Assembly: GCF_006345805.1 (NCBI RefSeq)
Contig: NC_043004.1
Span: forward strand, 76,012,001-76,076,000
Direction: 5' to 3'
Length of the DNA: 64,000 nt
Origin: Octopus sinensis
Lineage: Eukaryota
Position 1 is the stretch's first letter. Each line of letters opens with the position of its first letter. Under the pieces are notes generated by a model, which worked only from the letters and a program-made list of their open reading frames with translations, made no database searches and had not been told where the DNA came from. Shown piece by piece: positions 25,058-48,403 of this stretch. The translations under genes were made by a program, and so were the position numbers.

Positions 25058-28000
25058 GTTAAGGTCACTGCTTGGAATCAAACTCGGAATCTTGGGGTTA
25101 GTAGCCCGCGCTCTTAACCACTACGCCATATCTGTCGAATGTAAATAATGTACATAATTCCTCATCTCTTAAATATAGAACTGTAAGAAAGGGTTTGTTT
25201 TTTACCTGCATATTCCAAATTTGAGGAGCACCTGTTGTGGAACCAGTGACAACAGTTTTGCCATCAGAAGTCATTAAACAGCAATCAACCCTGACTCCAT
25301 CTGCAATAACCACGGGTCCACCAATTGATGCCATGCTTCCACCGCCTGTATTGTAACCAGAGGCATGAGATTCGAAATTCGATGCGGAATATGACTTCAT
25401 TTGGTATTGGTAAGAAGATGACAGAGTGTTGCTTCCAGAGGCATAGCCGGAGGCATCGAGAGTGTTCTGAGAGAAGATATTGTCTTGCATTGTTCCTAAA
25501 CCTCGTGAACTTCCGCCACCACTCGACGCTCCTAATGTTGAATACATGGCATTGTTGTATTGCTGCTGTGAAAAACTGCCGCTTGTTGAGTGTGCCATGT
25601 TGCTTGTGTGAGTGTTAGATTCATAGTTGTAGTTTGCGACATTTTGGTCACCGCCGCCATAGCCAGCAGCGTTGTTTACATAAGCGAAATTTGAAGAACT
25701 TCCACCTCCTGCTCCAGCTGCTAAGTTGGTACTGCTGTCTGTATTCAAATTGACGGAACTCTGTTTAGCAGAGTAGTGAGCCGACGAAAACGATGTAGCA
25801 GCGCGGCCTTGTTGAGGGGTCCCGATCACGGTTCCTTTGTTTGAAAACGTGCCAGTGACGCGCAGGGTTGCCGAGTCACTGGAACCTGCGGCTGCATTAT
25901 TGATCTGAGTACTGGATCCACCGCCACTACCGATGTAAGTGAAACCGGACACGCTTGATCCACCGCCACCGCCGCCGCCGCCAGCCGATCCATTAATCAG
26001 GCCCTTACTTGATGCTGCTGCACCCACGTTACCAGACGACTGTTGTATGACTGGCCCAGACGTTGGTGGGGATATGGAAATTCCACCTCCATCTGTTGTC
26101 GATGAACCCATAGCAAATCCGCCCTGGCTTAATTTTATAAGACCAAAAGCGAAACCGGCTCCAAGGACAAGCAAACCTAAGAATGTTCCAGCAGCTGCTC
26201 CAGCTCGGTCGGCTGAACCAATTCCCTCGGCAATGCTGGCCCCAGTGCCAGCACCACTGAAAGCAGAAGGTGCCGCTTTGACAGGTTGAGCAACAATGGC
26301 GGCGTAGTGAGGCACATCAACAGCTACACCAACACCACCATTTCCAGCGTCAGCTATGAGAATTCCGTTAATCCCTGGTGGAGGGACAGAGACCGGTGGT
26401 ACAATCACACCACCTCCATCTCCACCACCACCACCACCACCACCACCACCATCTCCTCCTCCTCCTCCTCCTCCACCACCTGATATAGGAGGAGGAGTAG
26501 TTGTTACATGCGGAGGAATAACCACGTTTGTTCTCCTGAAATATAAAAGAAAATACAAGGAAAGTTTTAGAAATAATGCTAAAATAGATTTAAAAAAAAG
26601 TTCTGATAGAGGCATAGGTCCACATTTTAGGAGTTAAAAAACAGTTTATTAAATTAACTCCAGTAGTTAACTGGTACATGCTTCATCAATTTTTGGCGGA
26701 TGAAAAGCAAGAGTGACCTTGGTGAAGTTTGAACTGAGAAAAATCAACACATATATAACTCTTAAAGTGGTGAGCTGGCAGAAACGTTAGCACGCTGGCA
26801 GAAATGCTTAGCAGTATTTCGTCTGCCATTACATTCTGAGTTCAAATTCTGCTGAGGTCAACTTTGCCTTTCATCCTTTCAGGGTCGATAAATTAAGTAC
26901 TAGTTGCATATTGGGTCAATCTAATTGACTGGCTCCTTCCCGCAAAATTTTGGGCCTTGTGCCTAGAGTAGAAAATATATATATAACACTAGCTGAATTA
27001 CCTGGTAATACCTGAGTAAAATAAATTAGATAAATAGGTAGATTTACAAAGACATTGACAAATAGTCCACATATTGTAGCTGGCATTATCACATGTCATA
27101 GCTTATTGTAGCTGATTTATAAACATGTGCTACAGCACCCACCACCACCTAGGAGGCTCTTGTATAGATTTTTATTGAAATGCAATTAGCCTATCACTCA
27201 AATGGATGTTAGTTTAACATGTATGCAAAGTTTCATCAAGATTGGTTTACTGGTGTAGGCAGCACGATGGTAACAGACAGAAATTGTCATTTATGTATAA
27301 GATGCTCTATGTCTGTATATTTTTCATTTTTCATTGTCATCTAGTTTCAGCTCACGAGCTGTGGCCATGCTGGGGCACTGCCATTCGTTGGGGCACCGCC
27401 ATATATATATCCTTTTTTTTTTGTGAGTTACACTTTAGTATTTGAAGTTGTAGAATTTGTTCCGCTCTCTAAGATTAATATTTTCTAAAATCATGGGACA
27501 TGAAACGGAATCATTCGGTACAGTTTTTGGTATTAATTGTCTCATAATACTCTTTTATTTGTTTCAGTCATTTGACAGTGGCCATGCTGGAGCACTGCCT
27601 TAAAGGGTGTTAGTTGAAGAAATCGACCCCAGGTCTTATTCTTTGTAAGCCTAGTACTTATTCAATTCATCTCTTTTACTAAACTGTTAAGTTACAGGGA
27701 CATAAACACACCAGCATCGGTTATCAAGTGATGGCAGACACAAATATACACACACAAACATACATACACACACACACATATATATATATAAAATAAAAAA
27801 AATGGGACAAGAACGCAAAACATCCAGATAGACAATACAAAGAAAATAAGGATGAGTCATTCAGAGTTTTCTTTTCTCAGTCGAGTTCCAGATTATCTTT
27901 GCAATTTTGACTGGTTATACTCAAGATTGCTCCAATCTGGCCAGCCCCAAGGAAAAACTAAGCTAAGAGCATTAGATTCCTTTCGTTACTAGCCCAGCTG

Positions 28001-31000
28001 AAACTGGCTGTGGCTCTGAGTACAAATGTCTTGTTTTCATAAGTTTTGAATTTAAAATCTTCCACCAAACCTTAGTCATAATTTATGTTCCTAACACTAG
28101 CTTAATGATAACTAAGTTATTTTACTAAACTCTTTGTTATATTTAAAATAAACTGAAAGAAACACAGAGCATCTCAAAATAAATACAGTAACGAAAGGGT
28201 TAAAGTTGGAGAGAGAATAAGGTGGGCCTTAACCCTTTTGATACCAAACCGGCTGAAACTACCCCTGGCTTTGTAGTACAAATGTCTTGTTTTCATGAAT
28301 TTTGAATTAAAATCTTCCACCAACGGGTTAAGCACCAAATCCAGTATATCTGCAATAAACCTTTTAACTTACCCTGAAAGAGAATATGGTATATCTGCAA
28401 TGACGACATCACCTGATAAACTCTTTTTATTCAGTTTCTCAAACAGGAATAGATTATTGAAATTGTAACCTGGCCAAAAGAATAAAATAATAAAAGATAT
28501 TAAATTTAAAAAAAAGAGAATATGATTAGAACTCAATAGAATGCAACAGGACAAAAAAATCAGAGTATGGGGACTGCCAAATGTGGAAGATGAAAAGCCC
28601 AGCAATACTTGTTATGGGGGCATTTGGAGTAATAATGAAAGAAATGGAAAAATTTGTAAATATGGTACCAACAGGTACAGCACACATTTTATGAAGCGCT
28701 CTATTAGTTTGAGTTTTATAGCATTTTCTTTGAGTACCAAAGGGGAACACCGTTAAGCGAAAAGTTAACTTTGTTAACTATTAATCCGTTAACCAAAAAT
28801 TTAACTGTGCCAAGGGATGGAGAGGTTTAAGTATGATAAACGGACAGGAACTGGTGTCTTGCTGTAGAAATCTTACATGGCTATCCCAGGTGGAAGGTTG
28901 TACCCCTTGGGCAAAAGTCTTCTATTGCAAACATGAGCTGATGCAAGTCTTGTGACTGTAACTGAGTGTACAGAAACTGTACTGAAACCTGATAGAGGGA
29001 ATAAACTAGTTTATGGGTGCCAGGCTTAATCTACTGCTCAATTTAACATCACCACTAAAGGTACCTCGGATGCCTTTAGTAATAATAATAATGAAATTAT
29101 TGTATACAGTGCTCAGGTGCACCACAACTTGTCAAAAAGCATATACAGTAATGTACAAATGTCTGGAAAGTGAACAGTGTATGAGTCTGGTACATGCTTG
29201 CGTGTGTATGGAGGGAGAAAATCAGGTGTAGTGTTGGCGAATCTCAGGAAGCATGGAAATTTTGAAGGATGCAGTGCTCCGACAACTAACAACTGATGCC
29301 GGCAGTTTGTTCCATGCTTTAGCAACTCTTAGCGTGAAAAAATGTTTCCGAAAGTCATGGGAGCTGAGCTGTTTTCTGACTTTGTAAACATGTCCATGGG
29401 TGTTAGACAGGTGGAGTTTGAAAAGGTGCTCAGAGTTATTGTTTGTAAGATGATTAATAATTTTATGGGTGTCTGCGAAATCAGCTGCCAGACATCGGAG
29501 TTTCAATGTATCCATGCTCAGGGAAGTAAGGTGTTCAGAATATGGCAAATGCCTGATGGATGGTATTCTCTTGATTGCATGTCGCTGAACGGCTTCCAGA
29601 CGATTAATATCCTGGGCAAGAGAGGAGTTCCAGACAGGTGATGCAAATTCCAGGTGAGGCCGCACCATAGCTATATAAAGCTTCAGATAGGTAGCTGGAG
29701 AGATAGCTAGAGATATCCGCTGTGTTGCAGATTTGGTCTCAGGTCAGAAGAAAACTTGATATCTTGATCTGTTCACTTCCTCCAGTTTCAAGTTGTGGAA
29801 TTTGTTTCTTTCTGCTGCTTTTTATTCCCACCCGTCTGTTGCATTACCTCCCTTGGCAGCCTAACTGTTCTTTCTTCTCTCCCTTTGACAAAACCATATA
29901 AAACGGCATCAGATACAAATAGAAAAACATTTGCGACTCATAAGCTGGAGTAATCGAGCGCAATCGCTGCTGCTGCTGCTGCTTGTTTGTTTGTTTGTTT
30001 GTTAAGCGAAGGGGTCTTCGTCGCAGAGCTCGCAAGATCGCGCCTCTGGAGAAGTTCGAAATGTGGTCCTTTGCTATTCGTAAGACCCGCAGAAGAGAAA
30101 GCAGGTCAACCCCCGACACCGAGAGCATCGATGGATGGACGAATGCGCATCCAGGCTCAGCGGTTGTGTAGGAAGTCGGGGACAAGAAACAGGAAGAAAG
30201 AGTGAGAGAAAGTTGGAGCGAAAGAGTACAACGGGGGTCGCCACCACTCCCTGTTGGAGTCTCATGGAGCTTTAGGTGTTTTCACTCAATAAACACACAC
30301 AACGCCTGGTCTGGGAATCGAAACCGCGATCCTCCGACTGCAAGTCCGCTGCTGTTAACCGCTTGAAGTAAAAAAGAAAGAAAAGGTACTCACCTCCAAT
30401 GATACCATAAAACGGTTCTTTGTATTCACTAGCAGAGATCTTTTGAGCTGCACCCACGGTTATTGTAGTTAATTTATCAAAATAGCCAGCTGGGTAGGTA
30501 TCTGCAAGTAAAAAGATTGGGTTAAGGTTTTCTAACAATGTCATAATGAACAACTGAAAATAAATGGACAAACGAGTATGTAGTGACGCTATTTTGGAAG
30601 TTTTTAGCGTGCATGCGCAGAGTTGGATTACTTCCAGTAGGCCGCCGGAAGTTCCCTCATGCGCATGTGCAGAGAACTGCCAATAGAAAGTTTTCCCGCT
30701 AGATCGGCCTTTTTGAAGCTGCAGCCCTATCGAGTGGACACGACTCAACCTTCTCTCAAGGAAAACCCAACACGTAGAGAAGCCCCCTTCTATGCGGGAA
30801 TGGAGACAGCATTTTGGCTCACACAAGTTAACTATTGTGAATGGTTTTATGGACTTGGCTACCAGTTTCGCCCTGAAGAAAATATATGTGTATAGATTTT
30901 ATTTTTGAATCCAGACAAAATAAAGTATTATTTATTGCTGTTGAAGATAGTTTAAGTTTTGGTTTTCCCTTCGACACAATTGAATGCAAAAGGATAAGAC

Positions 31001-32541
31001 TGACACCCCTCAAGTGTTCCTGAGACCTTCATCCTGTTACAAGTATGATTGCTAATGCAAGTACCTCCAAAGGATCTTTGGAGTAATGTTACTTGACAGG
31101 ATGTGGGTCAGAGATCAGGGGATCTCCCCAGCAGGAGCTGCTCCTTTTTTGTACTGGGAGGTCACAGCTTTGGTATCATGGAGAGGAAAGAATCACAAGA
31201 TTGATTCTTCAAGCTGAGCTTTACCAGCAGGAAATCTAGCAGAAGACCAGGAATGAGACTGTTGGATAATAGACATAGTCTCAATTGGTTACGCTTGGGA
31301 ATTCAGTTGGAAAGTGTAACAAGGGTGGCTTCAAGGTGAAGAAAATAACGGAGGGATGGAATAATTTGTTTTTATGACATTTCAAAATAAATCAAACAGT
31401 TGAAATACCTTTAATAATATTAATCTTCTTGTTTAGTCCAAGCTCAACCTAAACTGAGCACACCTATAGCCAAAGATAATCCAGTCTTAGCCATCTTTTC
31501 TCCCAAATGTATGGCATCTAAAAACAGACATGAGCATAGCAGTGTGGCTAAGAAGCTAGGCTTGCAACCAAATTAGGGGTGCAATACCAGTGTGCAGCAC
31601 CTTGGGTAAGTGTTTTCTATAATAGACCCGAGCCAAATAACATCTTGTGAGTGAAAATGGGTGCTGGAAACTGTGTGGAAGCCCACTGAATATGACTAGT
31701 GACTGAGACCTTTGGAAATATGCTGTGCGTGAGAAGACGACCCAGCAGGACAAGTGAGACCATAACCCGTGGCCTTTACCTGGGATGTAGCCAGTCCACT
31801 TATGCATACCTTTCCTTCTTTGGACACAAAACTCTGCTTGTGAAGACCTGTTGAGGCAAATGAAATCGAAATCGATCAAAAAATCAATGGAAATTTTAGT
31901 TGCGATATCAGTGCCGGTGGCACGTAAAAGAACCATCCGAACGTGGCTGTTGCTAGCGCCGCCTTGACTGGCCTCTGTGCCGATGGCACATAAAAAGCAC
32001 CAACCGATCGTGGCCCTTGCCGGCCTCCCCTGGCCCCTGTGCCAGTGGAACATAAAAAGCACCCACTACACTCACGGAGTGGTTGGTGTTAGGAAGGGCA
32101 TCCAGCTGTAGAAACACTGCCAGATCAGACTGGAGCCTGGTGCAGCCTCCTGGCTTCCCAGACCCCGGTCAAACCGAACAACCCATGCTAGCATGGAAAA
32201 TGGACGTTAAACGATGATGATGATATATATATATGTATATATGACGGTGCATGGTCAAGTGGTTAAGGTGTGGCACTCATGGTTTAGATGTTTGTGGGTT
32301 CAATTCTCAGACAGATTGGCACATTGTGTTCTTGATTAAAACACTTCTTTTTGCATTGCTCCAGTCTGTCTACTCAGATTTAAAGAAGAAGCCCTGTGAT
32401 GGAATAGCCTTCTGGTGAGAGGCAATGTTGGTCTGCTTGCCTAGCCAGTGGGTTAGCATTGTTCAAAATGCAAAGTGCATTGTAATAAGTGATGTATAAC
32501 AACATCTGATAATCTGGTCAATCATGAAATACATACATATA

Positions 32542-32590
<49 letters not shown>

Positions 32591-33709
32591 GGCAGTTTGT
32601 CTGTCTGTGTGTCTGTCAGGTTGTACCCTCACCCTGACCACGGCTTTCAACCGATTCTGATGAAACTTGACACACACATAGCCCAATGTCATAATTCAAA
32701 ACTAACGCAGCGAAAATTTTGAAAAGTTCCCCCAGTTCTGAAAAAAATCGATAAATTCGACATGGGGTCGAGAATCTAAGCTTTTTATATGCAACACATT
32801 TTCTGTTGTAGTTTTCGCAACTTGCAATCGATTTTCACCAAACTCATGGTGAAGCTTAATGTTACCCTAAGAAGCTTAATTCTGACGTTAGTTTTCCATG
32901 CAATACCTTACCATCAGAAAAAATCGATAAAAATCATGCCATTTTGGGAAATCGTGTTCAAATTCAAGATGACATATTTTCGACAATATCTTTCACAAAT
33001 TGGCAGGAATTTAAAAAAAAATTCACAGTGAGTATCATGTCTGCTCCAAGGTGCTATATGGCCCTTTTTATAGGATACTTTATTACTGGAAAAAATCGGT
33101 TAATTAAATCATATGTGGCACACATAGCAAACCGATTTGTGTATTAAACACAAACCACAGACTGTCTAGGGGACGCAACTCGACCTTTTTAACTCTCGGA
33201 AGCGTGGGGTAAGTATCCCAAAATGTATAAAAATGTACAAAAATGGCGAAAAAGCGGGCAGCAATGTGAGTGACAACAATGAAAAAGTCAAGTGACCAAA
33301 CTGAACAAACGAATGGAAAAGGTTTTTTGGTGCACACGACAAAAGCGGTTTATAATAAACCAAGAGTTTGCAAGTAGCGTCCGAGTACCCTTAGGGTACG
33401 TCAAAAATTTATGGTAAAACGTTTGAGGTGGTAGTTATAAAGAAAGTTTAAACAAAAAAAGTATTCGAATAAATTGTGGCTGCAGCAGCTATTAGCAGAA
33501 GTGGGTAAAGTCTTGAATGTAATTTCTTCCTGGTAGGAATTGGTTGGGTTGAATTATCGATAGCTGTTTGATAGTTATTTGGGAGTGAAGAGAAGACATT
33601 GCAACCTACACATGCGCCTTCGTTCCCTAGAGGGAAAGGACTAGATTGGGATTAGTCGTTGCCTACTAGGGGCTCTTACATACCCGGGCAACGCTGGGCT
33701 ATGCTGCTA

Positions 33710-33755
<46 letters not shown>

Positions 33756-33793
33756 ATATATATATATATATAATATATATATGTGTATATATA

Positions 33794-33859
<66 letters not shown>

Positions 33860-33881
33860 ATATATGTATATTATATATGTA

Positions 33882-33929
<48 letters not shown>

Positions 33930-33937
33930 GTATATTA

Positions 33938-34013
<76 letters not shown>

Positions 34014-34296
34014 AAAAAAAATGGAGTTGAATGCAGATGCTATTCAAATTCTTTTACTTTCGACATATGTTTCGAAGACAACATTGGTTTTATTCCAAAG
34101 GAATAAACGGTGTAAAATGCAATCTTCTCATCAGGAAAGAAAGAGAACCTATCTCAACAACAAGACATTATAAGAATTTTGATGACTGCATAAATGATAA
34201 ACGGAACGCTACCCTGAACGTGTGAATTTTGCTACCCTGGTAACTGTTTATTGAATTTTCCGTGTTAACGGCAAACAAAGGATAATACATTCATCC

Positions 34297-34332
<36 letters not shown>

Positions 34333-34729
34333 GGTATTAGTACCTAGAAGACCCAAAGAGTGGCAGGTAACACTAAGTAAGTGCTATGGACAGACCCTAG
34401 TTAAACTCTTGGTTTGATAGCGACATGAGTAAGACTATATCTATATCTCTTTCCTTATAAATGTCCTGGAAACTCCTCACAGCCTTGGCTTTGATATATA
34501 TTTTTGTCTAATATATATAGGTAAATTTAAAATGAGGGTGAGAAATTAGATATTAATTTAATTAACATCAATTTCACACCAGTGGTCTAGCATATAAAAA
34601 AACTGAAGGTTCAGTAAAATTGCATTATATACATATTAGAGGGAAACCACTATGTGGACACTCTTATGCTACAAATAGATCCATTCTAGCATAAGGGTGT
34701 CCACATAGTGGTTTCCCTCTAATATGTAT

Positions 34730-34766
<37 letters not shown>

Positions 34767-34768
34767 GT

Positions 34769-34799
<31 letters not shown>

Positions 34800-35576
34800 T
34801 GTGTGTGTGTGTGTGGTGTGTGTGTGTGTGTATATGTATTGCCCATGCTGGCATGAAAGGCGGATGTTAAACGACGATAATGATGATATGTGTGTGTGTG
34901 CATGTGTCTTTGTGTTTCTCCCCACTCACTGTTTGACAACTGGTGTTGCTTTGTTTACACCCCTGTACTTTAGAAGTGTGGCAAAGGAGACTAAAAAGAG
35001 ACCAAGTATGAGACTTTAAGAAAATAAATTCTAGGGGGTCAATTTATTCAACTAAACCCTTCAAGATGCTGACCCAGCATGGCTGCAGTCCAATGACTGA
35101 AACAAGCAGAATAGCAGATACTTAAAATAACAAGAAAATAGCACAAAAAAAACAACAACAATGTCTGACCTTCGTTTTCACTGGTAATACTTTCAATATT
35201 ATCTATTATCAAGACAGAGTCTGTAAAATTTCTCCTGAAGTACAAAGTGTGATATTCTCCATCACTGTAGTTCCCATTGCTGCTTAAGATGTGTTTACTT
35301 CCAGCTGTATCATAGATGGCCTGGATTTTGCCATCAACCTGAAAAGATAAATAGGGTCTGATACAGCCATAGTCACTACACTTTGAAATATTACTGTTGG
35401 CTGAATATATTTTATTTTGAAAATAAAAATAAAAATGTTTATCTTGTCCTGCATTTTATGAGAAATGGTGTTTGTTGCTTGCAGGTTTTTAACAGTTCAG
35501 TCACAGGTTCATAGCAATTTTGAAGGAAGGATGAGGGACCATCTCGCAACTTGGCAAATATATGTACATACATGCA

Positions 35577-35614
<38 letters not shown>

Positions 35615-38600
35615 TATACACATGTATGCATGCATGTATAATATATATATATATACGTAGTGAAAGAATAAAAGTGAAACTATTATATCACATTACAATA
35701 GAGATGTTATTGTTTCACTTTTGAAATGTAATACTGAAACAGTCTAAGAGATTGCTCCGGGCTCGCATTAGGCAAGCAGTTGGAAATTTTTTTGGCCCAT
35801 GACACTCCATGAACCCTAAGTAAGGCATGTGTAAAATTTGAATGAAATCAATTGGGTAGTTCTCAAGTTTTAGTGATACATACAGACAGACACACATTCT
35901 CAGTTTTATATATATATAAAATATAAATTAGAGAACCACTATTATGCAACTCAAACAGTGACAGACATAGACCAATACATAGATAACAAATAATATATAT
36001 TTTTATAAAACATATAACTTATAACTAGATCTCAAAAAGTATAAAATGAACGATCAATATATAATATGAGTTGCATAATAGTGGTTTTATGTCTAATTTG
36101 TATTTTATATATTTATACTGTGAAATTTGATTTAATATTAAATTGAATTTTTCCCTGTAAGTTTGGAGTTATACTCCCTAATACTATTATATATATAATA
36201 TATATATATATATATTATATATATATATATATATAGTAGTGAGAGGGAGAGAGAGAAAGAAAGAAAGAGATAAGATGTGGAAACATGACTGGGTGGAGAT
36301 TGGATAGGATGAGTGGATGAGTAAGTCTGGAGGTTGTGAAAGTAGAGTGGGAGATGGAGGGGAGGGGAATGTAGTGAGTAGGCATGGTCAGGAGGATAGG
36401 TTGCTAGTAGGGGTGGGTACAGGGGTGAGAGAGAAAGATAAATGAAAATAAAGAATGTGGAAAAAGGAACAACAAACCATTCGTATTTCGATGAAGTCAT
36501 CGTTGACGCTACTGACGATACGAGTCAAGACGCCATTAGTGTCATGTGTCATAAAGCCTAAAGCAAGTTTCTCTTCTGAAGAGTCAATACGTTTATCCGG
36601 TGGGTAGGTATATACTATTATACCATGCAGTTTGTTCTTGCCAATGTAGTAACCAATGGGCTCTGAAGAGAGAAAAACAAAAAGGGACCAACAATGTTAG
36701 TTTATTACTTACATAAAGAAGGCAGCTAGGCAGTTGTACATTAAAAAAAAACACAATTGATATCTGAGGCTTCCACACAGTTTCCATTTATTAAATGAGT
36801 AGATGTGGCAGCATAATATGTTTGCTTCCCAACCACATGGTTCTAGGTTTGGTCCCACTGTGTGACACTCTGGGTAAGTATCTTCTACTATAGGCAGGAG
36901 CACTCTGTTGGTTACGATGATGAGGGTCCCAGCTAATACGATCAACGGAACAGCAGCTTGTTTGTGAAATTAACGTGCAAGTGGCTGAGCACTCCACAGA
37001 TACGTATACCCTTAACATATTTCTCAGGGAGATTCAGCATGACACAGAGTGTGACAAGGCTGGCCCTTTGAAATACAGATACAACTCATTTTTGCCAGCT
37101 GAATGGACTAGAGCAACTAAAATAAAGTGTCTTGCTCAGGGATACAACACGTTGCCAGGAATTGAACTCACGACCTTATGATCACGAGCCGATTGTCCTA
37201 ACCACTAAGCCATGTGCCTTCACAACTTCTACTATAACCCTAAGCTGACCAGAGTTTTGTGAATGGGTTCGGTGTATATATTTATATATCTATAAGCTAG
37301 GAAATTGGCCAAGTCAATAGAGTATCAGATAGACTGCCTGGTAGGCTTCATTCGGGCTCTTTGTAATCTGAATTTGAATACCACTGAAGTCAGTTATATC
37401 TTTTGTCCTTCTGAGATTAATAAAGTATCAGTTCTGTACTGGAATCAAGTCTTCTCTCTTTTTTTTCTCTCCCTCTTTGGGAGGAAATCAAGTATGGTTA
37501 AATTTGGAGAGAGATGGCCCTTTTCCAGGTCTAAAAATGCCTAAGGTTTGCTGCGTATCATGATAATGTCTTTATAACTTTATCAGGAATCGAAGGCCCA
37601 AGGCAAGAAAAGGCAATTCACAGACACAATGAAGAAGGGTGGATATATGTCATTACATTTATTCCATAATTTACAATTGTTTCAACAATGTACAGGTGAC
37701 CAATCAAATACCATGTCTATAGACATGGATGATGGCAGAGATTTAGTCATGCATATTATGTAATGTGTGGAGGCATGTGGCCTAGTGTTTAGGGTGTCAG
37801 CATCATGATCGTAAGTTTGTGGCTTCAATTCCTGGACCAGGCGTTGTGTTGTGTTCTTGAGCAAAACACTTCATTTCATGTTGCTCCAGTCCACTCAGCT
37901 GGTAAAAATGAGTAACGCTGCGATGGACTGGCGTCCCGTCCAGCTGAGGAACACATATGCCATTGAAACCAGGCCCATAAGCCTGGCTAGGTTTTAAAAG
38001 GGACCGTTTATTTATTATATTTATTATGTAATGTATATTGCACAATAGCTACCACAGTCATTTAATCATAACCAAGGAGAGATGGCTATAATACATAAAA
38101 GAAATTAGCTATTCCATTAAAATGGGAAGAACTTTGCTTTGGATTAAAGTGAGAGGCACTGAAATTCAGAATCACAACATGAAGGAAAAACAGGCAGGTC
38201 AGCTGTATTTTTTAGTATCATAATTAGGTAGGGATTATTTATCAATTAGTGGATATAAGTCTGTCTTTGGACATGACTGATATATACACACACATACACA
38301 TACATATATCCCAACTTCATGGAAAGATGTGGCTTTCAGATTGTAGCATTAGGAGGAATTGTGGACTCTACAGACTGCACTGACGGCAATTTACTTAAGA
38401 AACAAGTAATCCTGAACAGAAACTAATACAGACCCTTTAACCCAGGCAGAGAACCTTTCTATGTACAGACATACTTTCGTAAAATAAATAAACATACAAA
38501 TAGGAGCATACTCACGTTCGGTACATCTAGTACCTGTGTAACCAGTTTTGTCACAGTTACATAGATAACCAGTCGGCCCTTGATAGCATTGCCCATTATT

Positions 38601-41600
38601 GGCACAAGTTGTCTTTTGACAGATGGTAGATACAGCTTTAAGAAGGAAAATAAAGAATATATGATAAACAGCAACCTATCTATTTTTCTATATGAGCACA
38701 AGACTAGCGCTTATTATGATTTATAATGTTTATATTAAACATTTTAGTCAATGATTTATAATTACATACCAGTAGCATACGTATAACTTTTCAAAATCAG
38801 CTAAATTTTTGGAAAGAAAATGGATATTTACAAGAACCATAAAAAATTGAAACAAGTTAAAATTTAGTTTCCTTCATCCAACAAATCATTACCAAATTAA
38901 ATAAATAAAAATAAATTAAATATATAAAATGTATTAACGTACCAAGACAACCAGTTTTGATATTGGAACCTTTACCAACCAAGCTACCCATACCAACAGG
39001 TTTGTCATTCAGACGTATAGAAGCCAAGCAGCCTTTAAATCCATGAGTAGAACTTAATCGTTCAGCAATTTTCCCTTTCAGTAAAGATTTGGGCATCCCA
39101 CCTAGATAGAGAGGACCATCTAAATCAAGTTCGTCTGACTTTTGTTGGTTATAAATCACCTCAGAACCATCAACGTGCGCAATAAGTTGCTGGGGTGTGT
39201 CAAAGTTGATTTTCACCGAGTGCCATTTGTCATCGCTAACATCAAGGGAGTTCAAATGGATGGATGTTGGGTTTCCGCCTCTGTCGTAGACAAGCCACAG
39301 ATTGCGTTTGAAGATTTCTAGTGCGATGAATTCATCGTTCATACCATTGTTGAAGAGAAGGATTCCACTGGATTCTTTAGTTTTAAACATTAATTCAATA
39401 ATGTTTCCTAAAGAATTCAGTTTTGGTAAACGAACAAAGTTTTTGATGTTTGGGATAGTGATGGGGTTGTAGACAATAGAAGGCAGACGATTCGTATTGT
39501 TGACAAAGACAAGAGTGGTACGAGGTTCTCGCTGTTCCATAGAGAAAACGTCATGTCCATTGTAGAAAAGATTCTGCAAGAAACCAACAAAGTAGCCGCC
39601 ATCTGGACTTCCTCCTTTGGCTGAAGCAATGTCCAATCGCTTCATGATGAAATAAAATCCTTTACCATCAACCCGACCTGAAATTAAACAAAAACATTTG
39701 AGAAACAGGTGCTAAAAAAAATGGAGTTATCATGTAACCAATCAGAACTTAAAGCATCATTTTCATTGAGAGGTACCTGGATTTGCAAAGTAAATTATAG
39801 CAGTGTCTATGTTCACATATAAACTTACATGTAGTAGTGTTTACAATAACATGTAGTAAAGTAAAATTGGGTAAAGACTCCCTTCGGTCATGAATGAACA
39901 TAGGATTGCACCTAGAAAGTTCCCCTCGGAGGCATAAGTCCGGGCAAGGTTTTTTTGTGGAAGACCAGCAATTGCCCATGCATACCAGTTTCCCCTCTCC
40001 ACACCATTGATGATATCCAAGGGAAAGGCAAAGGGGCCGATACAGCTTGGCACCAGTGATGCTGCAACTCATTCCTACAGCTGAGTGAATTGGAGCACCA
40101 TGAAATAAAGTATCTTGCTCAAGAACACAACACTGAGCTTGGTCTGGGAGTTGAACTCACTACCTCATGATTGTGAGCCTGACACACTAATCACTGAGCC
40201 TACGGTATTGGTCAAGAATTCAATATATGAGAAAAAAATTATTAACTCAAATCAAATTTACCTTCACTTGCTTTGCCATTATCAACTTTAAGATATAATT
40301 GGTTCCCCTTCCTTTTCAGTTGCATGGTGTGCCATTTCTGGTCATTCAAATCAGAACCAGCCCGAAGAACCTAGAAATTGGAAAAAAAAAAAAAGAAAAA
40401 AGAAAAACAAATGAACAACACCGTGGTAGAAGTGTTATCTACAGAATGGAGGAAATGGATACTGGACACCTTTCCAGTCACAAACACTAAAGTACTTTTG
40501 TAGTTGTCAAGCTTTGGTTGTTGTTGAAATACTAAGATGGCATTCCCCTCATCCCTCCAGTCAATAAGCCTGTCGTTTGCCTTAATATTTTCTCCACTTC
40601 AGAGAAATTCTTCATTCTTGAGATTGTCTCCCCTTCTCATAAGGCGCCAGTCTTAACTGTCATTGTCTAAAGGCAGAGATAATTCTAATAAATCGATAAT
40701 TTATATTGTATGGTACGTGACATATTTGTATTTGCCTATGTTGTCCTAATATTTGCCACTGGCCACTTTGAGTTATTTCCCTTGGCTTGTTTGCGTTTAA
40801 ATTATGCAAACCACCTCAAACATAAATGCGTTCAACTCTTTTTCTAATATAAGTCAAAGTCCCCCTGGCTTTGTACATTTGGTGTGCTCATGCTGGCTAT
40901 TGAGCCAGAAACACATGCCCATGACTGTCCTCTTAACTCCAGCCAATAAGCCTGTCCTTTACCTTAAATGGCATGTTGACTTCGGAGAAATTTCAATTCT
41001 TGAGCTTATTTTCTCTTCCTCAAGTGGAGCTGGTTTTAATTGCTACTAGCAGTATCGCCCGGCGTTGCTCGGGTTTGTAAGGGAAATAACTATAAAGCAT
41101 TTTTAGAGAGTTATAGCCAAAAAATGGAAAAAAAATGATGGTAAATTTTTTTTTAGTTAAAAAGGTCGAGTTGCGTCCCCTAGACAGTCTGTGGTTTGTG
41201 TTTCTGATTCTCGACCCTATGTCGAATTTATCGATTTTTTTCAGAACTGGGGGAACTTTTCAAAATTTTCGCTGCGTTAGTTTTGAATTATGACATTGGG
41301 CTATGTGTGTGTCAAGTTTCATCAGAATCGGTTGAAAGCCGTGGTCAGGGTGAGGGTACAACCTGACAGACACACAGAAACACACACAGACAAACTGCCG
41401 TTTATATATAGAGAGATTTGGTTATTATGACATACAGACATAAATGAATTTATAAAGTAAACTTAGATGTAATATATATATATATATCATGAAATGCGTG
41501 TAGTCAATTTATTATTTTTTAATTTATTGATTTTTTGAATAATGTTTATTATAGTATAATTAAATTTTTTCTATATGATATAGATAATGTCTTTCACTAT

Positions 41601-44600
41601 TGAATTTTGTAACAGAGGTTATTTCTCTTAATCATATACATACATACATATATATATATATATTTTGCCATGAAGGATCGCTAGCCTCTAAACCCTTTTT
41701 TATTTTCTCTCTCTGCCTATTTCTGTGTTCCTTTCTGTTGAAGAGCGTAGGCTCAAAACGTAAAAGACTTTCTCACTTCCCAAGCATAAAACTAATACAT
41801 CTGTTTGTTGTTTACACACCTGTCTTCGTTTTTTCTTTTGTTTTTTTTTTGTAAATTCCAACTATACACACACACATGCACACACATATAGACACATATG
41901 TATATAATTTTAGTATTTTTTTTTTATTATGGCCTGGTTCCAAATTGGGTCGCAACAACTAAGTCTACCCATCGCACTTCTTGGTCCATCGTCACTGCCT
42001 TGAGGTCCAGGATACCATTCCAGGCCAGTGTCTGCAATTCAGTTGCCGACAACATTTTCCTCTTATAAATGAATTTATAATATAAATTTACAGTTAATGT
42101 AAAGAGCATTTCCAAAATATTCTTTAATACCATTAAAAAAACTATTTTTTTACCTTTCTTTGGCCGTTGACTGTTATAATAAGTTTCAAAATTCCATTTT
42201 CAAGTACAGCCATTGCGCTGTCTGTGGAATTTTCAGCTGTCGTATGGAACAGGGTAGTGTTACTGAGATGTGTCTTGAAGCGTAGGGAAATATCATTTGT
42301 ATGAGAGCGTATAGCATCAGCAAAGATAACCCAGGCCCCTTTGGTGCCATCAAACATGGTGACAGGAGCAGCTGTAAAAGAGATTCATTTATGGATCAAG
42401 TATTTATAAAGTCTTGCTATTGTGCTTTGCAATTAACTCCTATTTTAATTTATGAAGATTATGTCTGACAGGCATTAGATTTATTATTTGAGAAGACCTG
42501 TCAAGCCTGATGAAATCGTAGTTGTGGACGATGCTAGTGGTGGGTAGCTGGCACCACCACTGCCTGACAACTGCTGCTGGTGTGCTTATATCCCCATAAC
42601 TTAGTGGTTCGGCAAAAGAGACCGACAGAATTAATACTAGACTTTAAAAAAATTAAGTATCGGGGTCGATTCGTTTAACTAAAACAATTCTCCAGGGCAG
42701 TGCTCCAGCTTGGCAGCAGTCTAATGACTGAAACGAATAAAAGATAAAAATCTAGATGTCCCGTATTTGTGTAATGAAATGGAACACATTGAAGTTGATC
42801 AAATGAAATAAATTCTAAATACCTTGACCACAATTGGGGCCAGTGAAAGGCTCGTTGGTACAGTCACAACTATAACCATTCCAGTAGTCAATGCAGTTGC
42901 CATTTTTACATGTTGTGCTGTCACACTGGGGTACAATAGGGTAACAACGAGCATCGATAGCGCGACCGAGCTGGAATCTTCCCACATTACTGAGAAGGTT
43001 GGTTCTGATACGGTTCATCTAAAAGAGAGAAAAAGAAAAAGAAAATATTCATTAAATGTAAAAGAAAATGGTAATTAAGTGATGGAAGTGATGACGATAA
43101 TGAGGATGATGATGATGACAGTGATGAGGACAATGATGAATGATGACGATGATGATGATAATTGCAATAATGATGATAATATACGCTGATGATGATGATG
43201 ATGATATAGATGACAACGGAAATGATAAAGATGGTGATGATGGTGATGATGATGATGATGACAGTGATGTGGACAATGATGTTGATGATGATGATAAGGG
43301 GAAGGACAAGTTAACTCACCTGCACATTCAGCAAACAACCTTGGTATCCCTTCTTAGCCCAAAGGTCCCATGGCAGTCTGTTAGCATTTGGTACCCAACC
43401 AACATACATTGGACCTGCCAGTGGCCGATTCTGTCTTTCGTTGAGATTCAGACGAACACTCTTCTTCTTGTTATCCAATTCCAACTTCAGAAATGTCTTC
43501 AGGGGGTTAATCGTGACGGTGGCTTCGTGAGCTTGACGATCGTTAACAATGGTATCAAAGAAGCTGACTCGTTTGCTTCCATCACCAAAATTGTAGACAA
43601 AGTAGAGTTTCCCTTCAGATATTTCAACGGCCGCATAGTAGCGTGGGTCGCCATTGTAGAACATCAAACCTTCAGGGTCATTGGTGTAGAACTTGAACTT
43701 GAGTTGACCCCCTTGGGAGACGTCCCAAGCATCGGTCTCCACATAGCTCTGATGACGCACAAACGTTATTGGAGAGAACGTGTTGGGTGGCGTTTGTGAA
43801 GGAGTGATGAATATAGGGGTGTGGGTCGTTGTTGGATGGACCCCGTGGATAATCTGTGGGTTCATATTCAGAATGTCCAAAACATATCGGCCAGATGTGT
43901 AGATCAGCTGAAAGGAGGAATAAAAAAAAGGGTTGAATCAGTGATTGTTGCGGGGTTAGTAGTAGTAGTAGTAGTAGTAGTAGCAGCAGCAGCGGCTATA
44001 ATGATTATGATAGGCACAGGTATGGCTGTGTGGTTAAGAAGCTCACTTTGTCACAATGTGGTTTTGGGTTCAGTCCCACTGTACAACACCTTGGGAAATG
44101 CTGCCAAGCGTTTTGTCCAGCATGCTAACAATTCTTATTTCTTTATTGCCCACAAGGGGATAAACAAGGACAGTCAAAGGGATTAAGACGATTACATCGA
44201 CCCCAGTGCATAACTAGTACTTAATTTATCGACCCCGAAAGGATGAAAGGCAAAGTCGACCTTGGTAGAATTTGAACATGGAACGTAACGGCAGACGAAA
44301 TACCGCTAAGCATTTCGCCTGGCGTGCTAACGATTCCGCTAGCTTGCTGCTGCTTCTGATGACAGTGATGATGATTATTCCACAAGACCTGGAATTTGGG
44401 GGAGGGGATTAGTTGATTACATCGGCTTCCCCCAGTGCATCACTGGTACTTATTTCAATGACCCCCCAAAAGGACGAAAGGCAAAGCCGAATTCAGTGGA
44501 ATTTGAACTCAACAGAAGAAACGGTGCTGAACATTTTTGCCTAGCATGCTAAAGACCCTACCAGCTCACCACCTTAACAACAACAACAGCAGTGGAGGCA

Positions 44601-47305: not shown

Positions 47306-48403
47306 ATAATAATAATAATAAACTTGCAGCTTACATTGCCTGCAATACCCTTGAAGTTTTTGTTAACCTCTGATGAGGTGTAGTCAATGTTATCAGGGGT
47401 TCCACCAATGAAGATGTAGTCTTTGGGTTGTAATAGACTGATGGAAATTGGCAGACTGAAAGCTTGTCTGTAGATGTCATCAACACTCCAGTAAACCTGT
47501 GAAGATAAAAAGATGAAGAAAAGTTTTAAAAATTAATGTTTTGAGGTGTATAAATAGATATGTATATATATATATATCTAGGGGGAAAACAAGAAGAAAA
47601 TGGAGAATAAGTAGTTGTAATTAATAATTTATTTGTATGTTAAAAAAGATGACATTAAAAAAAATAACAGTACAAATAAATTGATTAGAAATTGAGAGCT
47701 CAAAGAAAAATAAATTAAAATAAACGAAACCTACATATATGTTTCAGTTCTATCACCTAGTTGATGGGAATTTCGAAGCATTTGGTTTAATGCGAAGAAA
47801 AATTACCACATTCTAACTATATGGTGGTAGGACTTCTTCAGGGTAAATGATTACTTAGATAATCATTTTCTTTTGAGGGGAGTATAGAGTATGAGTTATA
47901 TCATCATCATCGTTTAACGTCCGCTTTCCATGCTAGCATGGGTTGGATGGTTCAACTGGGGTCTGGAAACCCCAAAGCTGCACCAGGCCAGTCAGATCTG
48001 GCAGTGTTTCTACAGCTGGATGCCCTTCCTAATGCCAACCACTCCGAGAGTGTAGTGGGTAATTTTATGTGCCACCGACACAGGTGCCAGACGAGGCTGG
48101 CGAACGGCCATGCTCGGATGGTGTTTTTTATGTGCCACCGACACAGGTGCCAGACGAGGCTGGCGAATGGCCATGCTCAGATGGTGTTTTTTTATGTGCC
48201 ACTGACACAGGTGCCAGACGAGGCTGGCGAACGGCCACGATCGGATGGTGTTTGTTACGTGCCCACAGCATGGAGGCCAGTCGATGCGGTACTGGCTACG
48301 GCCACGTTCGGATGGTTTTCTTATGTGCCACCGGCACTGGTACCACAAAGATACAAATTCCATTGATGTTCATCGATTTTGATTTGGTTTGATTTTGATT
48401 TTG

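What the first reader, a model, noticed from the sequence alone, without database searches (positions are those of the whole stretch)
34057..34139. Fully canonical hammerhead ribozyme in the sense strand of the SS4-equivalent intron
Seen on the minus strand: CUUUC-CUGAUGA-GAAGA[...]UCUUC-GAAA-CAUAU-GUC-GAAAG. All core nucleotides are intact, stems I and II are perfect 5-bp helices, the triplet is GUC (cut between 34062 and 34061) and stem III is the minimal palindrome ACAUAUGU. Known: Penelope-like elements carry such minimal type I hammerheads, which typically work as dimers through the palindrome. Inference: possible co-transcriptional cleavage of the pre-mRNA, affecting splicing or releasing a secreted-ectodomain or truncated RNA.
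Basis: partly seen in the sequence, partly recalled or inferred. Interest (0 to 1): 0.7.

Follow-up and report, generated by a model that had tools for sequence, protein, structure and literature searches.

The report
Lone hammerhead ribozyme motif in neurexin-like intron
A complete, non-random hammerhead self-cleaving RNA motif sits in the sense strand of an intron of a neurexin-like gene, but it is a single stray copy of a kind that mobile elements scatter through animal genomes, and nothing here shows that it cuts the pre-mRNA or regulates the gene.

Summary
On the minus strand, 34139-34057 reads CUUUC-CUGAUGA-[54-nt helix II]-GAA-ACAUAUGU-C|GAAAG. Every hammerhead core nucleotide is present, and the cut site lies between 34062 and 34061. 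It is the only such motif in the window. It is not chance: 3.72 Gb of random sequence gave one hit with stems this good and none with the palindromic helix III.

Rfam's Hammerhead_1 is the best-matching family but falls below threshold (18.7 vs 34 bits), mainly because of the long helix II.

The host context also holds. The motif lies 1,030 nt into a 4,668-nt GT-AG intron of a neurexin-like gene, a few codons from the vertebrate SS4 position, in sense orientation.

The functional inference is not supported. There is no second copy in 64 kb. Trans-dimerisation through the palindrome needs roughly 28 µM RNA. In native context the active fold is 1e-3 to 1e-4 of the predicted ensemble. A cut intron fragment would have no poly(A) tail.

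The best reading is a solo relic of a hammerhead-carrying mobile element. Its 282-bp carrier has short terminal inverted repeats and sits between (TA)n tracts. It is an ordinary new member of a known kind. Cross-species conservation and genomic copy number could not be tested with these tools.

The parts
34057..34139 (-). Complete type-I hammerhead motif (83 nt)
   Evidence: Sequence read. Only descriptor hit in the window. Best Rfam family is RF00163, full length, 18.7 bits, E = 0.02.
34128..34134 (-). Core box C3-A9 (CUGAUGA)
34074..34127 (-). Helix II: a 54-nt irregular rod. It has 6 bp (including U.G), a U.U mismatch, 5 bp, an internal loop, and an 8-bp tip hairpin UUUAUUCC-UUU-GGAAUAAA (34107-34089). 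G10.1-C11.1 closes the helix.
   Evidence: MFE equals centroid, -13.1 kcal/mol, z = -3.73. Only 1% of inner-44-nt shuffles are as stable. Pairing probability is 0.97-1.0 in local context.
34071..34073 (-). Core G12 A13 A14
34063..34070 (-). Helix III, ACAUAUGU. As a monomer it is A15.1-U16.1 and C15.2-G16.2 with an AUAU loop. It is a perfect 8-nt palindrome that could pair between two copies.
   Evidence: Monomer pairing probability about 0.015. Self-duplex -7.0 kcal/mol; the predicted dimer MFE is the double hammerhead.
34061..34062 (-). Predicted scissile bond: C17 (34062) | G1.1 (34061)
   Evidence: Position follows from the motif. Cleavage itself was not tested.
34050..34061 (-). Helix I 3' strand GAAAG (34061-34057), UA bulge (34056-34055), then optional extension AAAGA (34054-34050)
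34135..34144 (-). Helix I 5' strand CUUUC (34139-34135) plus extension UCUUU (34144-34140)
34019..34300 (.). 282-bp unique carrier segment that holds the hammerhead, lying between (TA)n tracts
   Evidence: No other copy in the window. Not unusually structured as RNA, z = +0.17.
34019..34033 (+). Left terminal inverted repeat, AAATGGAGTTGAATG
   Evidence: Matches the reverse complement of 34288-34300 (AAATGGA--TGAATG). p is about 0.004-0.007 against random segments or shuffled ends.
34288..34300 (+). Right terminal inverted repeat, CATTCATCCATTT
33711..34012 (.). Long imperfect (TA)n microsatellite, followed by an A9/T9 run at 34013-34021, flanking the carrier on the 3' side of the minus strand
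34300..34329 (.). (TA)15 flanking the carrier on the other side. CCATTT(TA)15AAATGG is itself a palindrome.
30502..35169 (-). Host intron: 4,668 nt, GT...AG, polypyrimidine tract before the AG. The hammerhead starts 1,030 nt after the 5' splice site. The cut site is 3,560 nt before the intron's last base.
35170..35338 (-). Upstream exon ([10 protein letters not shown]...ITSENE), the middle of a Laminin-G/LNS domain
   Evidence: Pfam Laminin_G_2, E = 9.7e-6, profile positions 27-80. Splice sites.
30394..30501 (-). Downstream exon ((D)[36 protein letters not shown]), continuing the same LNS domain
   Evidence: Weak tblastn hits (E = 14) to the YPAG...IIIGG...F.G part of neurexin, backed by the in-frame GT-AG splice junction and the conserved YPAG motif. 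ag| acceptor and |gtgagt donor, with an in-frame junction.

Best explanation
This is a genuine hammerhead-family motif that arrived with a small mobile element and now sits as a solitary copy in an intron of a neurexin-like gene.

It is transcribed as part of the pre-mRNA because it is on the sense strand. Helices I and II can form locally. Helix III is only 2 bp plus a tetraloop, and no second copy is available to build the double-hammerhead that such palindromic helix III motifs use. Upstream intron sequence competes for the helix I and II strands.

I therefore expect no self-cleavage at C34062|G34061, or only slow cleavage, with the intron spliced out normally and no host function.

Shown: the motif, its non-randomness, its single-copy state in 64 kb, the intron and strand, and the predicted energetics.

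Inferred: the mobile-element origin (from the literature and from the terminal repeats and TA flanks), the low activity, and the neutrality.
For: - Motif and non-randomness.
- Family: Rfam Hammerhead_1 is the top family over its full length.
- Single copy: blastn self-search, descriptor, and a covariance model of the motif, where the next hits score 14.8 and 14.6 bits at E about 0.6 with broken cores.
- Dimer route closed: binding free energy from partition functions is about -6.5 kcal/mol, a Kd of about 28 uM.
- Folding in context: the active-fold fraction is about 7e-3 for the bare motif and 3e-4 to 6e-5 with 50-200 nt flanks. Helix I pairing probability falls from 0.8-0.94 to 0.01-0.04.
- Carrier: a 282-bp unit with terminal inverted repeats between (TA)n tracts.
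- Literature: most metazoan minimal hammerheads are dispersed single motifs ascribed to truncated PLEs, and a single motif gave no detectable cleavage (PMC4209133). PLEs show an insertion bias for microsatellites (PMC8557442). Retrozyme monomers are spread evenly along chromosomes, and about 43% overlap introns in Xenopus (bioRxiv 10.64898/2026.07.22.740005). A giant squid genome annotation reported 235 Hammerhead_1 hits (PMC6962438).
Against: - No other copy of the carrier could be retrieved, so the mobile-element origin rests on one locus. The protein database has no close orthologue of the host gene (best 41% identity), and no eukaryotic genome collection was available.
- No RT or GIY-YIG ORF is adjacent.
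- The carrier's terminal inverted repeats fit a DNA transposon better than a PLE or retrozyme.
- (TA)n tracts are common here (27 blocks in 64 kb, often 100-400 bp apart), so the TA flanks discriminate little.
- Invertebrate retrozyme hammerheads with the same 2-bp-plus-tetraloop helix III do cleave as monomers, at 0.1-0.8 per min (PMC7229834).
- Nearest-neighbour folding cannot score tertiary contacts or co-transcriptional folding, so low activity is a prediction and not a result.
- A core with no mutation at all is somewhat unexpected for an old neutral relic.
Confidence: 0.6

Rival explanations
1. Exapted intronic ribozyme. The hammerhead cleaves a fraction of nascent pre-mRNA as a monomer, racing against splicing of the 4.7-kb intron. 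In this way it would tune the output of full-length neurexin-like mRNA or influence splice choice at the SS4-like position. Precedents are the CPEB3 HDV-like ribozyme and the amniote intronic hammerheads.
For: - Sense orientation in the intron, with a fully intact core and perfect stems.
- The cut site is 3,560 nt upstream of the 3' splice site, so a ribozyme with a half-life of a minute or two could compete with splicing. This is the race model described for Cpeb3 and for engineered intronic ribozymes (PMC10919898, citing Fong et al. 2009).
- Helix II is significantly structured and helix I has a bulge 5 bp from the core, which could supply non-canonical tertiary contacts.
- Invertebrate hammerheads with 2 bp plus a tetraloop in helix III are active as monomers (PMC7229834).
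Against: - No conservation data.
- Helix II is 54 nt, not the 4 bp plus loop that makes the known loop1-loop2 contacts.
- The active fold is disfavoured once native flanks are included.
- A single minimal hammerhead was inactive in vitro (PMC4209133).
- In a PLE studied with RNA-seq, no reads ended at the hammerhead site (PMC11167929).
- The motif sits inside a unit that looks like an insertion.
- The cleavage product lacks poly(A) and would encode a truncated LNS domain.
Confidence: 0.08
2. The motif belongs to a still-functional mobile element family (non-LTR retrozyme, PLE-derived, or a TIR-bounded MITE-like element). The hammerhead serves the element, processing multimeric or tandem transcripts elsewhere in the genome. 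This copy is a recent insertion, which would explain why its core is unmutated.
For: - Intact core and stems.
- The unit length of 282 bp is within the 170-400 bp range of retrozyme monomers, and GC is low (PMC7229834).
- Terminal inverted repeats.
- The predicted dimer MFE of two copies is exactly the double hammerhead.
- Retrozyme monomers are dispersed, many of them in introns (bioRxiv 10.64898/2026.07.22.740005).
Against: - No tandem or second copy in 64 kb.
- The unit is not a highly self-paired rod as retrozyme circRNAs are (z = +0.17).
- No family members could be retrieved.
- The hammerhead is internal and intact, not split at the unit ends as expected for insertion of a self-cleaved monomer.
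Confidence: 0.12
3. Chance look-alike. AT-rich, purine/pyrimidine-biased intron sequence happens to match the hammerhead consensus and was never a ribozyme.
For: - The stems are low-complexity (CUUUC/GAAAG and GAAGA/UCUUC).
- Rfam scores it below threshold.
- A relaxed descriptor does give tens of random hits per Gb.
- The finding was picked post hoc from a scan.
Against: - Only 1 all-Watson-Crick 5/5 hit, and 0 that also had a palindromic helix III, in 3.72 Gb of random sequence.
- The independent extra structure in helix II has p of about 0.01 or less.
- Helix I extends further.
- Real-sequence matches to the two core boxes lack stems.
Confidence: 0.04

Closest known systems
Canonical type-I hammerheads of metazoan non-LTR retrozymes and satellite repeats (coral, mussel, Schistosoma, newt/axolotl; PMC7229834)
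   Same: Type-I topology and identical core. [quoted passage not shown] The carrier is low-GC and a few hundred bp long.
   Different: Retrozymes occur as tandem repeats and give highly self-paired circRNAs. This is one copy, and its unit is not unusually structured. Helix II is 54 nt, not about 4 bp plus a loop, so the canonical loop1-loop2 contacts are absent. The carrier has terminal inverted repeats.
Minimal hammerheads of Penelope-like elements (PMC4209133; Rfam RF00163 covers part of them)
   Same: Short helix I (4-5 bp), longer-than-usual helix II, G10.1-C11.1, and a palindromic 15.x-16.x region that implies dimer action. Most genomic copies are solitary. PLEs prefer microsatellite targets (PMC8557442).
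   Different: There is no unpaired nucleotide between A9 and G10.1. Helix III has a real 2-bp stem and loop. No pLTR, RT or GIY-YIG ORF is nearby. Helix II is far longer than 6-8 bp.
[quoted passage not shown]
   Same: A hammerhead in the sense strand of an intron of a protein-coding gene.
   Different: Those are ultraconserved across species and have stable helices that allow monomer cleavage. Here conservation is untested, helix III is minimal, and Rfam prefers Hammerhead_1 within the clan.
CPEB3 intronic HDV-like ribozyme (PMC10919898)
   Same: A self-cleaving motif in an intron of a neuronal gene. The distance-to-next-exon race logic would apply, with 3.56 kb here against 9.9 kb there.
   Different: It is a different ribozyme class. 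The CPEB3 ribozyme is conserved in mammals and has been shown to cleave and to affect mRNA and protein levels. Nothing of that kind is shown here.

Membership tests
Hammerhead ribozyme, type I (Rfam RF00163, clan CL00010) | Conserved core: C3 U4 G5 A6 N7 G8 A9, G12 A13 A14, A15.1-U16.1, H17 (not G) | tested here: met
   All positions are present with U7 and C17. The Rfam alignment shows every core column matched.
Hammerhead ribozyme, type I (Rfam RF00163, clan CL00010) | Three helices around the core, helix I open (type I), G10.1-C11.1 closing helix II | tested here: met
   Helix I is 5 bp Watson-Crick (plus a 5-bp extension). Helix II is 5 bp Watson-Crick plus an extended rod. Helix III is only 2 bp plus a tetraloop.
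Hammerhead ribozyme, type I (Rfam RF00163, clan CL00010) | Score at or above Rfam's gathering threshold (34 bits) | tested here: not met
   No hit in the whole-window or 601-nt searches. In a 106-nt search it scores 18.7 bits, E = 0.02, with the full model aligned. The main penalty is a 50-nt insert where the model has 10.
Hammerhead ribozyme, type I (Rfam RF00163, clan CL00010) | Site-specific self-cleavage 3' of H17 giving 2',3'-cyclic phosphate and 5'-OH ends | not testable with these tools
   Needs in vitro transcription and RNA end mapping.
Hammerhead ribozyme, type I (Rfam RF00163, clan CL00010) | Tertiary contacts between helix I loop/bulge and helix II loop (needed for activity at physiological Mg2+) | tested here: inconclusive
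   A UA bulge lies 5 bp into helix I and a U.U mismatch lies 6 bp into helix II. There is no canonical short helix II with a capping loop.
Penelope-like element (PLE) minimal hammerhead | Lies in a pLTR flanking an RT plus GIY-YIG ORF (or is a truncated copy of one) | tested here: not met
   No long ORF in the intron. No RT/EN Pfam hit among the ORFs scanned. Truncated solo copies cannot be excluded without the family consensus.
Penelope-like element (PLE) minimal hammerhead | Architecture: helix I 4-5 bp, helix II 6-8 bp with an unpaired nucleotide between A9 and 10.1, helix III absent or a small palindrome | tested here: inconclusive
   The helix I length and the palindromic helix III fit. 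There is no extra nucleotide after A9, and helix II is much longer (PMC4209133).
Penelope-like element (PLE) minimal hammerhead | Many copies per genome that form consensus families with covariation | not testable with these tools
   No eukaryotic genome collection was available. Metagenome, viral and GTDB scans gave only unrelated box matches.
Metazoan non-LTR retrozyme | Head-to-tail tandem repeats of 170-400 bp, each with a type-I hammerhead | tested here: not met
   Single copy in 64 kb.
Metazoan non-LTR retrozyme | The monomer RNA folds into a highly self-paired structure | tested here: not met
   The 281-nt unit has an MFE of -49.7 against a shuffle mean of -50.5, z = +0.17.
Metazoan non-LTR retrozyme | Invertebrate-type helix III (2 bp plus a palindromic tetraloop) and low GC | tested here: met
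   A-U and C-G pairs plus an AUAU loop. Motif GC is 0.32 and intron GC is 0.37. Criteria from PMC7229834.
Conserved intronic hammerheads (HH9/HH10 type) | Sense orientation within an intron of a protein-coding gene | tested here: met
   Intron 35169-30502 on the minus strand with in-frame flanking exons.
Conserved intronic hammerheads (HH9/HH10 type) | Conservation at the orthologous position across species | not testable with these tools
   The best homologue of the neighbouring exon in the protein database is 41% identical, on a 1.2-kb contig. Exact look-ups found nothing.
MITE-like DNA transposon (as carrier) | Terminal inverted repeats at the ends of a short non-coding unit | tested here: met
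   A 13-nt match with a 2-nt gap exactly at the ends of the unit. p is 0.004-0.007.
MITE-like DNA transposon (as carrier) | Target-site duplication and multiple genomic copies | tested here: inconclusive
   The flanks are an A9 run plus (TA)n on one side and (TA)15 on the other. No clean duplication can be read. Copy number is not testable.

The most novel reading that the evidence does not exclude
The hammerhead is an exapted, conserved regulator. It would be kept in the sense strand of the intron next to the SS4-like splice position of a cephalopod neurexin. There, slow monomeric self-cleavage would compete with co-transcriptional splicing and set the yield or isoform balance of a key synaptic adhesion gene. 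This would be an invertebrate, hammerhead-class counterpart of the mammalian CPEB3 ribozyme.
Probability: 0.06. Interest if true: 0.75.

Novelty: new member of a known kind. Interest (0 to 1): 0.3.

Why it matters
If this is only a relic, it is one more of the thousands of dispersed type-I hammerhead motifs that retroelements leave in animal genomes. It is useful mainly as an annotation, and as an example that Rfam misses copies with a long helix II.

It would matter if the motif proved active and conserved. Intronic ribozymes with a demonstrated effect on a host neuronal gene are very few, with CPEB3 the clear case. Neurexin splicing near SS4 is central to synapse specification.

A secondary point concerns the carrier. 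A hammerhead inside a unit bounded by terminal inverted repeats, if confirmed as a family, would extend the kinds of mobile elements known to carry this ribozyme.

Tried and rejected
- Rfam at gathering threshold on the whole window, and at E up to 10 on 601 nt, gave no hammerhead hit. Only a 106-nt search exposed the sub-threshold RF00163 match.
- A simple gapped pattern (helix II up to 38 nt) missed the motif and found two random matches.
- Second copies in the window were sought by blastn self-search, by descriptor and by a single-sequence covariance model. None was found.
- Relatives elsewhere were sought by exact look-ups of the neighbouring exon ORF and of the ORF overlapping the motif. 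Neither is on record.
- A homology search with the LamG exon gave a best hit of 41% identity from a 1.2-kb contig. The source taxon therefore seems absent, and I did not spend further protein searches.
- Pattern scans of metagenome, viral and GTDB contigs returned 3, 0 and 5 loci. None has helices I/II.
- The rod-like retrozyme RNA idea is not supported.
- The tRNA-derived SINE idea for the carrier found no tRNA-like gene.
- The (TA)n flanks as evidence for PLE targeting are weak, because TA tracts are frequent and clustered here.
- A home-made LamG HMM and motif greps failed to find the downstream exon.
- The AAUAAA inside helix II, 27 nt before the cut site, was considered as a cryptic poly(A) signal. 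Six such hexamers occur in the intron, so it is about a 10% coincidence.
Full report
**Observation**

The minus strand from 34139 to 34057 reads CUUUC CUGAUGA GAAGA-[44 nt]-UCUUC GAA ACAUAUGU C GAAAG. In standard hammerhead numbering:
- C3-A9 is 34134-34128.
- G10.1 and C11.1 close helix II (34127-34074).
- G12-A14 is 34073-34071.
- A15.1...U16.1 is the 8-nt palindrome 34070-34063.
- C17 is 34062 and G1.1 is 34061.

A type-I descriptor that I wrote finds this as the only hit in the window on either strand. The descriptor asks for CUGANGA, helix II with up to 80 nt, GAAA, helix III of at least 2 bp, UH, and helix I.

**Is it chance?**

In 40 Mb of first-order Markov sequence modelled on the window there were 39 hits with stems of at least 3/3 bp, 6 with at least 4/4, and none with at least 5/5.

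In 3.72 Gb of i.i.d. sequence with the window's composition there were:

| Requirement | Hits |
|---|---|
| stems at least 4/4 bp, G-U allowed | 437 |
| stems at least 5/5 bp, G-U allowed | 65 |
| stems at least 5/5 bp, all Watson-Crick (as here) | 1 |
| the above plus a fully palindromic helix III | 0 |

For this window the expectation is far below 0.01. Even for a genome of a few Gb it is about 0.1 or less.

Two features that the descriptor does not demand strengthen the case.
- The 44-nt 'loop' of helix II continues the helix as an irregular rod ending in a perfect 8-bp hairpin. Its MFE is -13.1 kcal/mol with z = -3.73, and 0 of 200 dinucleotide shuffles are as stable. With the closing 5 bp fixed, only 1% of shuffles of the inner 44 nt are as stable.
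- Helix I can continue for 5 more bp beyond a UA bulge.

As a real-sequence control, eight loci from metagenomes and GTDB genomes match the two core boxes at the right spacing. They have 0-2 bp of helix I and 1-4 bp of helix II. The random models ignore local compositional heterogeneity, so these numbers are approximate. Even so, a chance origin is unlikely.

**Rfam**

There is no hammerhead hit at gathering score on the whole window, nor at E up to 10 on 601 nt. When only 106 nt are searched the filters relax. Hammerhead_1 (RF00163) is then the best of 4,227 families. The whole model (1-45) aligns to 34140-34056 on the minus strand, at 18.7 bits and E = 0.02, against a gathering score of 34. 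Every core column matches. The cost comes from 50 nt where the model expects 10 in helix II. Rfam's consensus helix III (ACGCGCGU) is the same palindromic design as ACAUAUGU.

**Host gene and intron**

ORFs on the minus strand encode Laminin-G domains (38857-39645 with E = 1.5e-25, and 43311-43880 with E = 5.9e-20). Two upstream ORFs (53067-53714 and 60930-61529) give weaker Laminin_G_3 matches, one of them below Pfam's cut-off. EGF-like segments lie after the first two.

The last of these hits is weak (E = 14).

Reading the DNA gives two exons:
- Exon 35338-35170: ttttcag|GTTGAT...GAAAACGAAG|gtcaga, encoding VDGKIQ...ITSENE plus one base.
- Exon 30501-30394: ttacttgcag|ATACCTACCCAGCTGGC...ATTGGAG|gtgagt.

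The split codon G+AT gives Asp and keeps the frame: ...[27 protein letters not shown].... The downstream exon's identity rests on this in-frame GT-AG junction and on the conserved YPAG motif, not on the tblastn score.

The intron is therefore 35169-30502, 4,668 nt, GT-AG. It lies about six residues before the conserved YPAG, after which vertebrate SS4 is inserted, so 'SS4-equivalent' is a fair approximation. The hammerhead is on the sense strand. It starts 1,030 nt after the 5' splice site, and its cut site is 3,560 nt before the end of the intron.

**The carrier**

The hammerhead lies in a unique 282-bp segment (34019-34300). On one side is a roughly 300-bp imperfect (TA)n tract plus an A9/T9 run (33711-34021). 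On the other is (TA)15 (34300-34329).

The two ends of the unit are inverted repeats: AAATGGAGTTGAATG (34019-34033) against the reverse complement of 34288-34300, AAATGGA--TGAATG. A match this good in the terminal 35 nt occurs in 0.7% of random window segments and 0.4% of shuffled ends.

A third AAATGG after the (TA)15 makes CCATTT(TA)15AAATGG a palindrome. It could alternatively be read as a 6-bp target duplication of a plus-strand retroposon with a (TA)n tail.

With one copy these readings cannot be separated. Other points on the carrier:
- TA flanks fit the microsatellite preference reported for PLEs (PMC8557442). However, TA tracts are frequent and clustered in this window (27 blocks), so this is weak evidence.
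- The unit is not a highly paired rod like retrozyme circRNAs (z = +0.17).
- It has no tRNA-like part.
- No RT or endonuclease ORF is nearby.
- No other copy, intact or decayed, is in the window by blastn or by a covariance model built from the motif. The next-best hits score 14.8 and 14.6 bits with broken cores.

**Can it cleave?**

*Local folding.* In isolation or with up to 25 nt of flank, helices I and II are predicted with probabilities of 0.77-0.94 and 0.97-1.0. Helix III is only about 0.015, and the fully hammerhead-compatible ensemble is about 0.7-0.9%.

*Native flanks.* With 50-200 nt flanks, upstream sequence (for example AUGCAGUC pairing with GAUUGCAU of helix II) takes over. Helix I falls to 0.01-0.04 and helix II to 0.05-0.34. 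The hammerhead-compatible fraction falls to 3e-4 to 6e-5.

*Dimer.* Two copies would form exactly the double hammerhead as their MFE, with an 8-bp intermolecular helix III and helix I in trans. The binding free energy from the partition functions is only about -6.5 kcal/mol, a Kd of about 28 uM. That is out of reach for a nuclear pre-mRNA, and no cis partner exists in 64 kb.

*Published experiments* point both ways.
- A single minimal PLE hammerhead showed no detectable cleavage, and dimers cleaved poorly (PMC4209133).
- Axolotl motifs cleave weakly as monomers and well as dimers. Coral and mussel retrozyme motifs, which share the 2-bp-plus-tetraloop helix III, cleave as monomers at about 0.8 and 0.1 per min (PMC7229834). 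Those have a short helix II; the coral motif also has loop-loop contacts, while the mussel motif lacks most of the conserved ones. Here helix II is a 54-nt rod.
- In a PLE examined with RNA-seq, no reads ended at the hammerhead site (PMC11167929).

Nearest-neighbour models do not capture tertiary contacts or co-transcriptional folding. Low activity is therefore my prediction, not a result.

**Consequences if it did cleave**

The race model applies. Fast intronic ribozymes abort splicing and slow ones are harmless (Fong et al. 2009, as summarised in PMC10919898). With 3.56 kb to the next exon, a half-life of a minute or two would be needed.

The 5' product would carry a 2',3'-cyclic phosphate and no poly(A) tail. 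Read-through from the exon stops after about 41 intron-encoded residues (...[14 protein letters not shown]...HLEGFS*), in the middle of an LNS domain. A stable mRNA for a 'secreted ectodomain' is therefore not a credible outcome.

An AAUAAA lies inside helix II, 27 nt before the cut, and a U9 run lies 40 nt after it. Six AATAAA hexamers occur in this intron, so this is about a 10% coincidence.

**Comparison with what is known**

The motif works like the type-I hammerheads of metazoan retroelements, and by its core and topology it is one of them. It fails Rfam's score threshold. It also fails the context criteria of both retrozymes (tandem repeats, rod-like RNA) and PLEs (pLTR with RT/EN ORF, bulged nucleotide after A9).

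Solitary copies are the rule for these motifs. Most minimal hammerheads are single and are ascribed to truncated PLEs (PMC4209133). Retrozyme monomers are dispersed, and about 43% overlap introns in Xenopus (bioRxiv 10.64898/2026.07.22.740005). A giant squid genome annotation reported 235 Hammerhead_1 hits (PMC6962438). I found no paper in the library that describes hammerheads in octopus genes.

**Verdict**

- Best explanation: a solo, probably inert or barely active hammerhead left by a small mobile element in a neurexin-like intron (confidence 0.6).
- Rival: the copy belongs to a still-active element family (0.12).
- Rival: an exapted intronic regulator (0.08).
- Rival: chance (0.04).

The novelty class is a new member of a known kind, and interest is about 0.3. 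The two things that would change this are conservation at the orthologous position and monomer cleavage at physiological Mg2+. Neither could be tested here.

Noticed in passing
window 34019-34033 and 34288-34300 (also 34329-34334): The 282-bp unit carrying the hammerhead ends in inverted repeats, AAATGGAGTTGAATG and AAATGGA--TGAATG (p about 0.004-0.007). A third AAATGG after the (TA)15 makes CCATTT(TA)15AAATGG a palindrome. This looks MITE-like, or like a 6-bp target duplication of a plus-strand retroposon with a (TA)n tail.
   Followed up: partly
window 34626-34732: A near-perfect 107-bp palindrome with arms of about 45 bp (TATATACATATTAGAGGGAAACCACTATGTGGACAC...). It abuts a (TA)n(CA)n microsatellite about 500 nt upstream of the hammerhead in the same intron. 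Nature unknown.
   Followed up: partly
window 34089-34094: An AAUAAA hexamer lies inside helix II, 27 nt before the predicted hammerhead cut, and a U9 run lies 40 nt after it. Six AATAAA hexamers occur in the 4,668-nt intron, so this is probably coincidence.
   Followed up: partly
window 25098-26615 and 16656-17717 (minus strand): A 505-aa ORF has poly-Gly and Ser/Gly/Asn-rich regions, one transmembrane-like stretch and no Pfam hit. It ends in the start of a WD40 repeat, and a WD40 beta-propeller exon follows. Both are on the same strand, downstream of the neurexin-like LamG exons. Whether this is a separate gene or an unusual C-terminal part of the same one was not resolved.
   Followed up: no
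window 1940-2383 (+), 8285-8644 (-), 31953-32117 (-), 47938-48366 (+): A dispersed repeat family is recognisable by the shared pseudo-ORF motif [15 protein letters not shown]. At least four copies are in the window, one of them inside the same intron. It is probably a SINE-like element.
   Followed up: no
window 29222-29668 (minus strand): A 148-aa ORF ([15 protein letters not shown]...) resembles, from my own knowledge, the C-terminal region of non-LTR retrotransposon reverse transcriptases. It has no Pfam hit. It lies in the next intron downstream.
   Followed up: no
window 38394-38675 and 42818-43018 (minus strand): EGF-like segments follow two of the LamG exons, giving LamG-EGF-LamG-EGF-LamG. 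Two further upstream exons (53067-53714 and 60930-61529) give weaker Laminin_G_3 / concanavalin-like matches, one of them below Pfam's cut-off. The domain order was not compared in detail with alpha-neurexin or Caspr-type proteins.
   Followed up: partly
L001-L003 (metagenome contigs Ga0209122_1021278, Ga0209339_1006674, Ga0209260_10005024): Three metagenome contigs share an identical ~100-nt stretch containing CTGATGAG...CGAAACATATGTC. It does not fold as a hammerhead, with 2 bp of helix I and 1 bp of helix II. It is presumably a conserved gene segment.
   Followed up: partly
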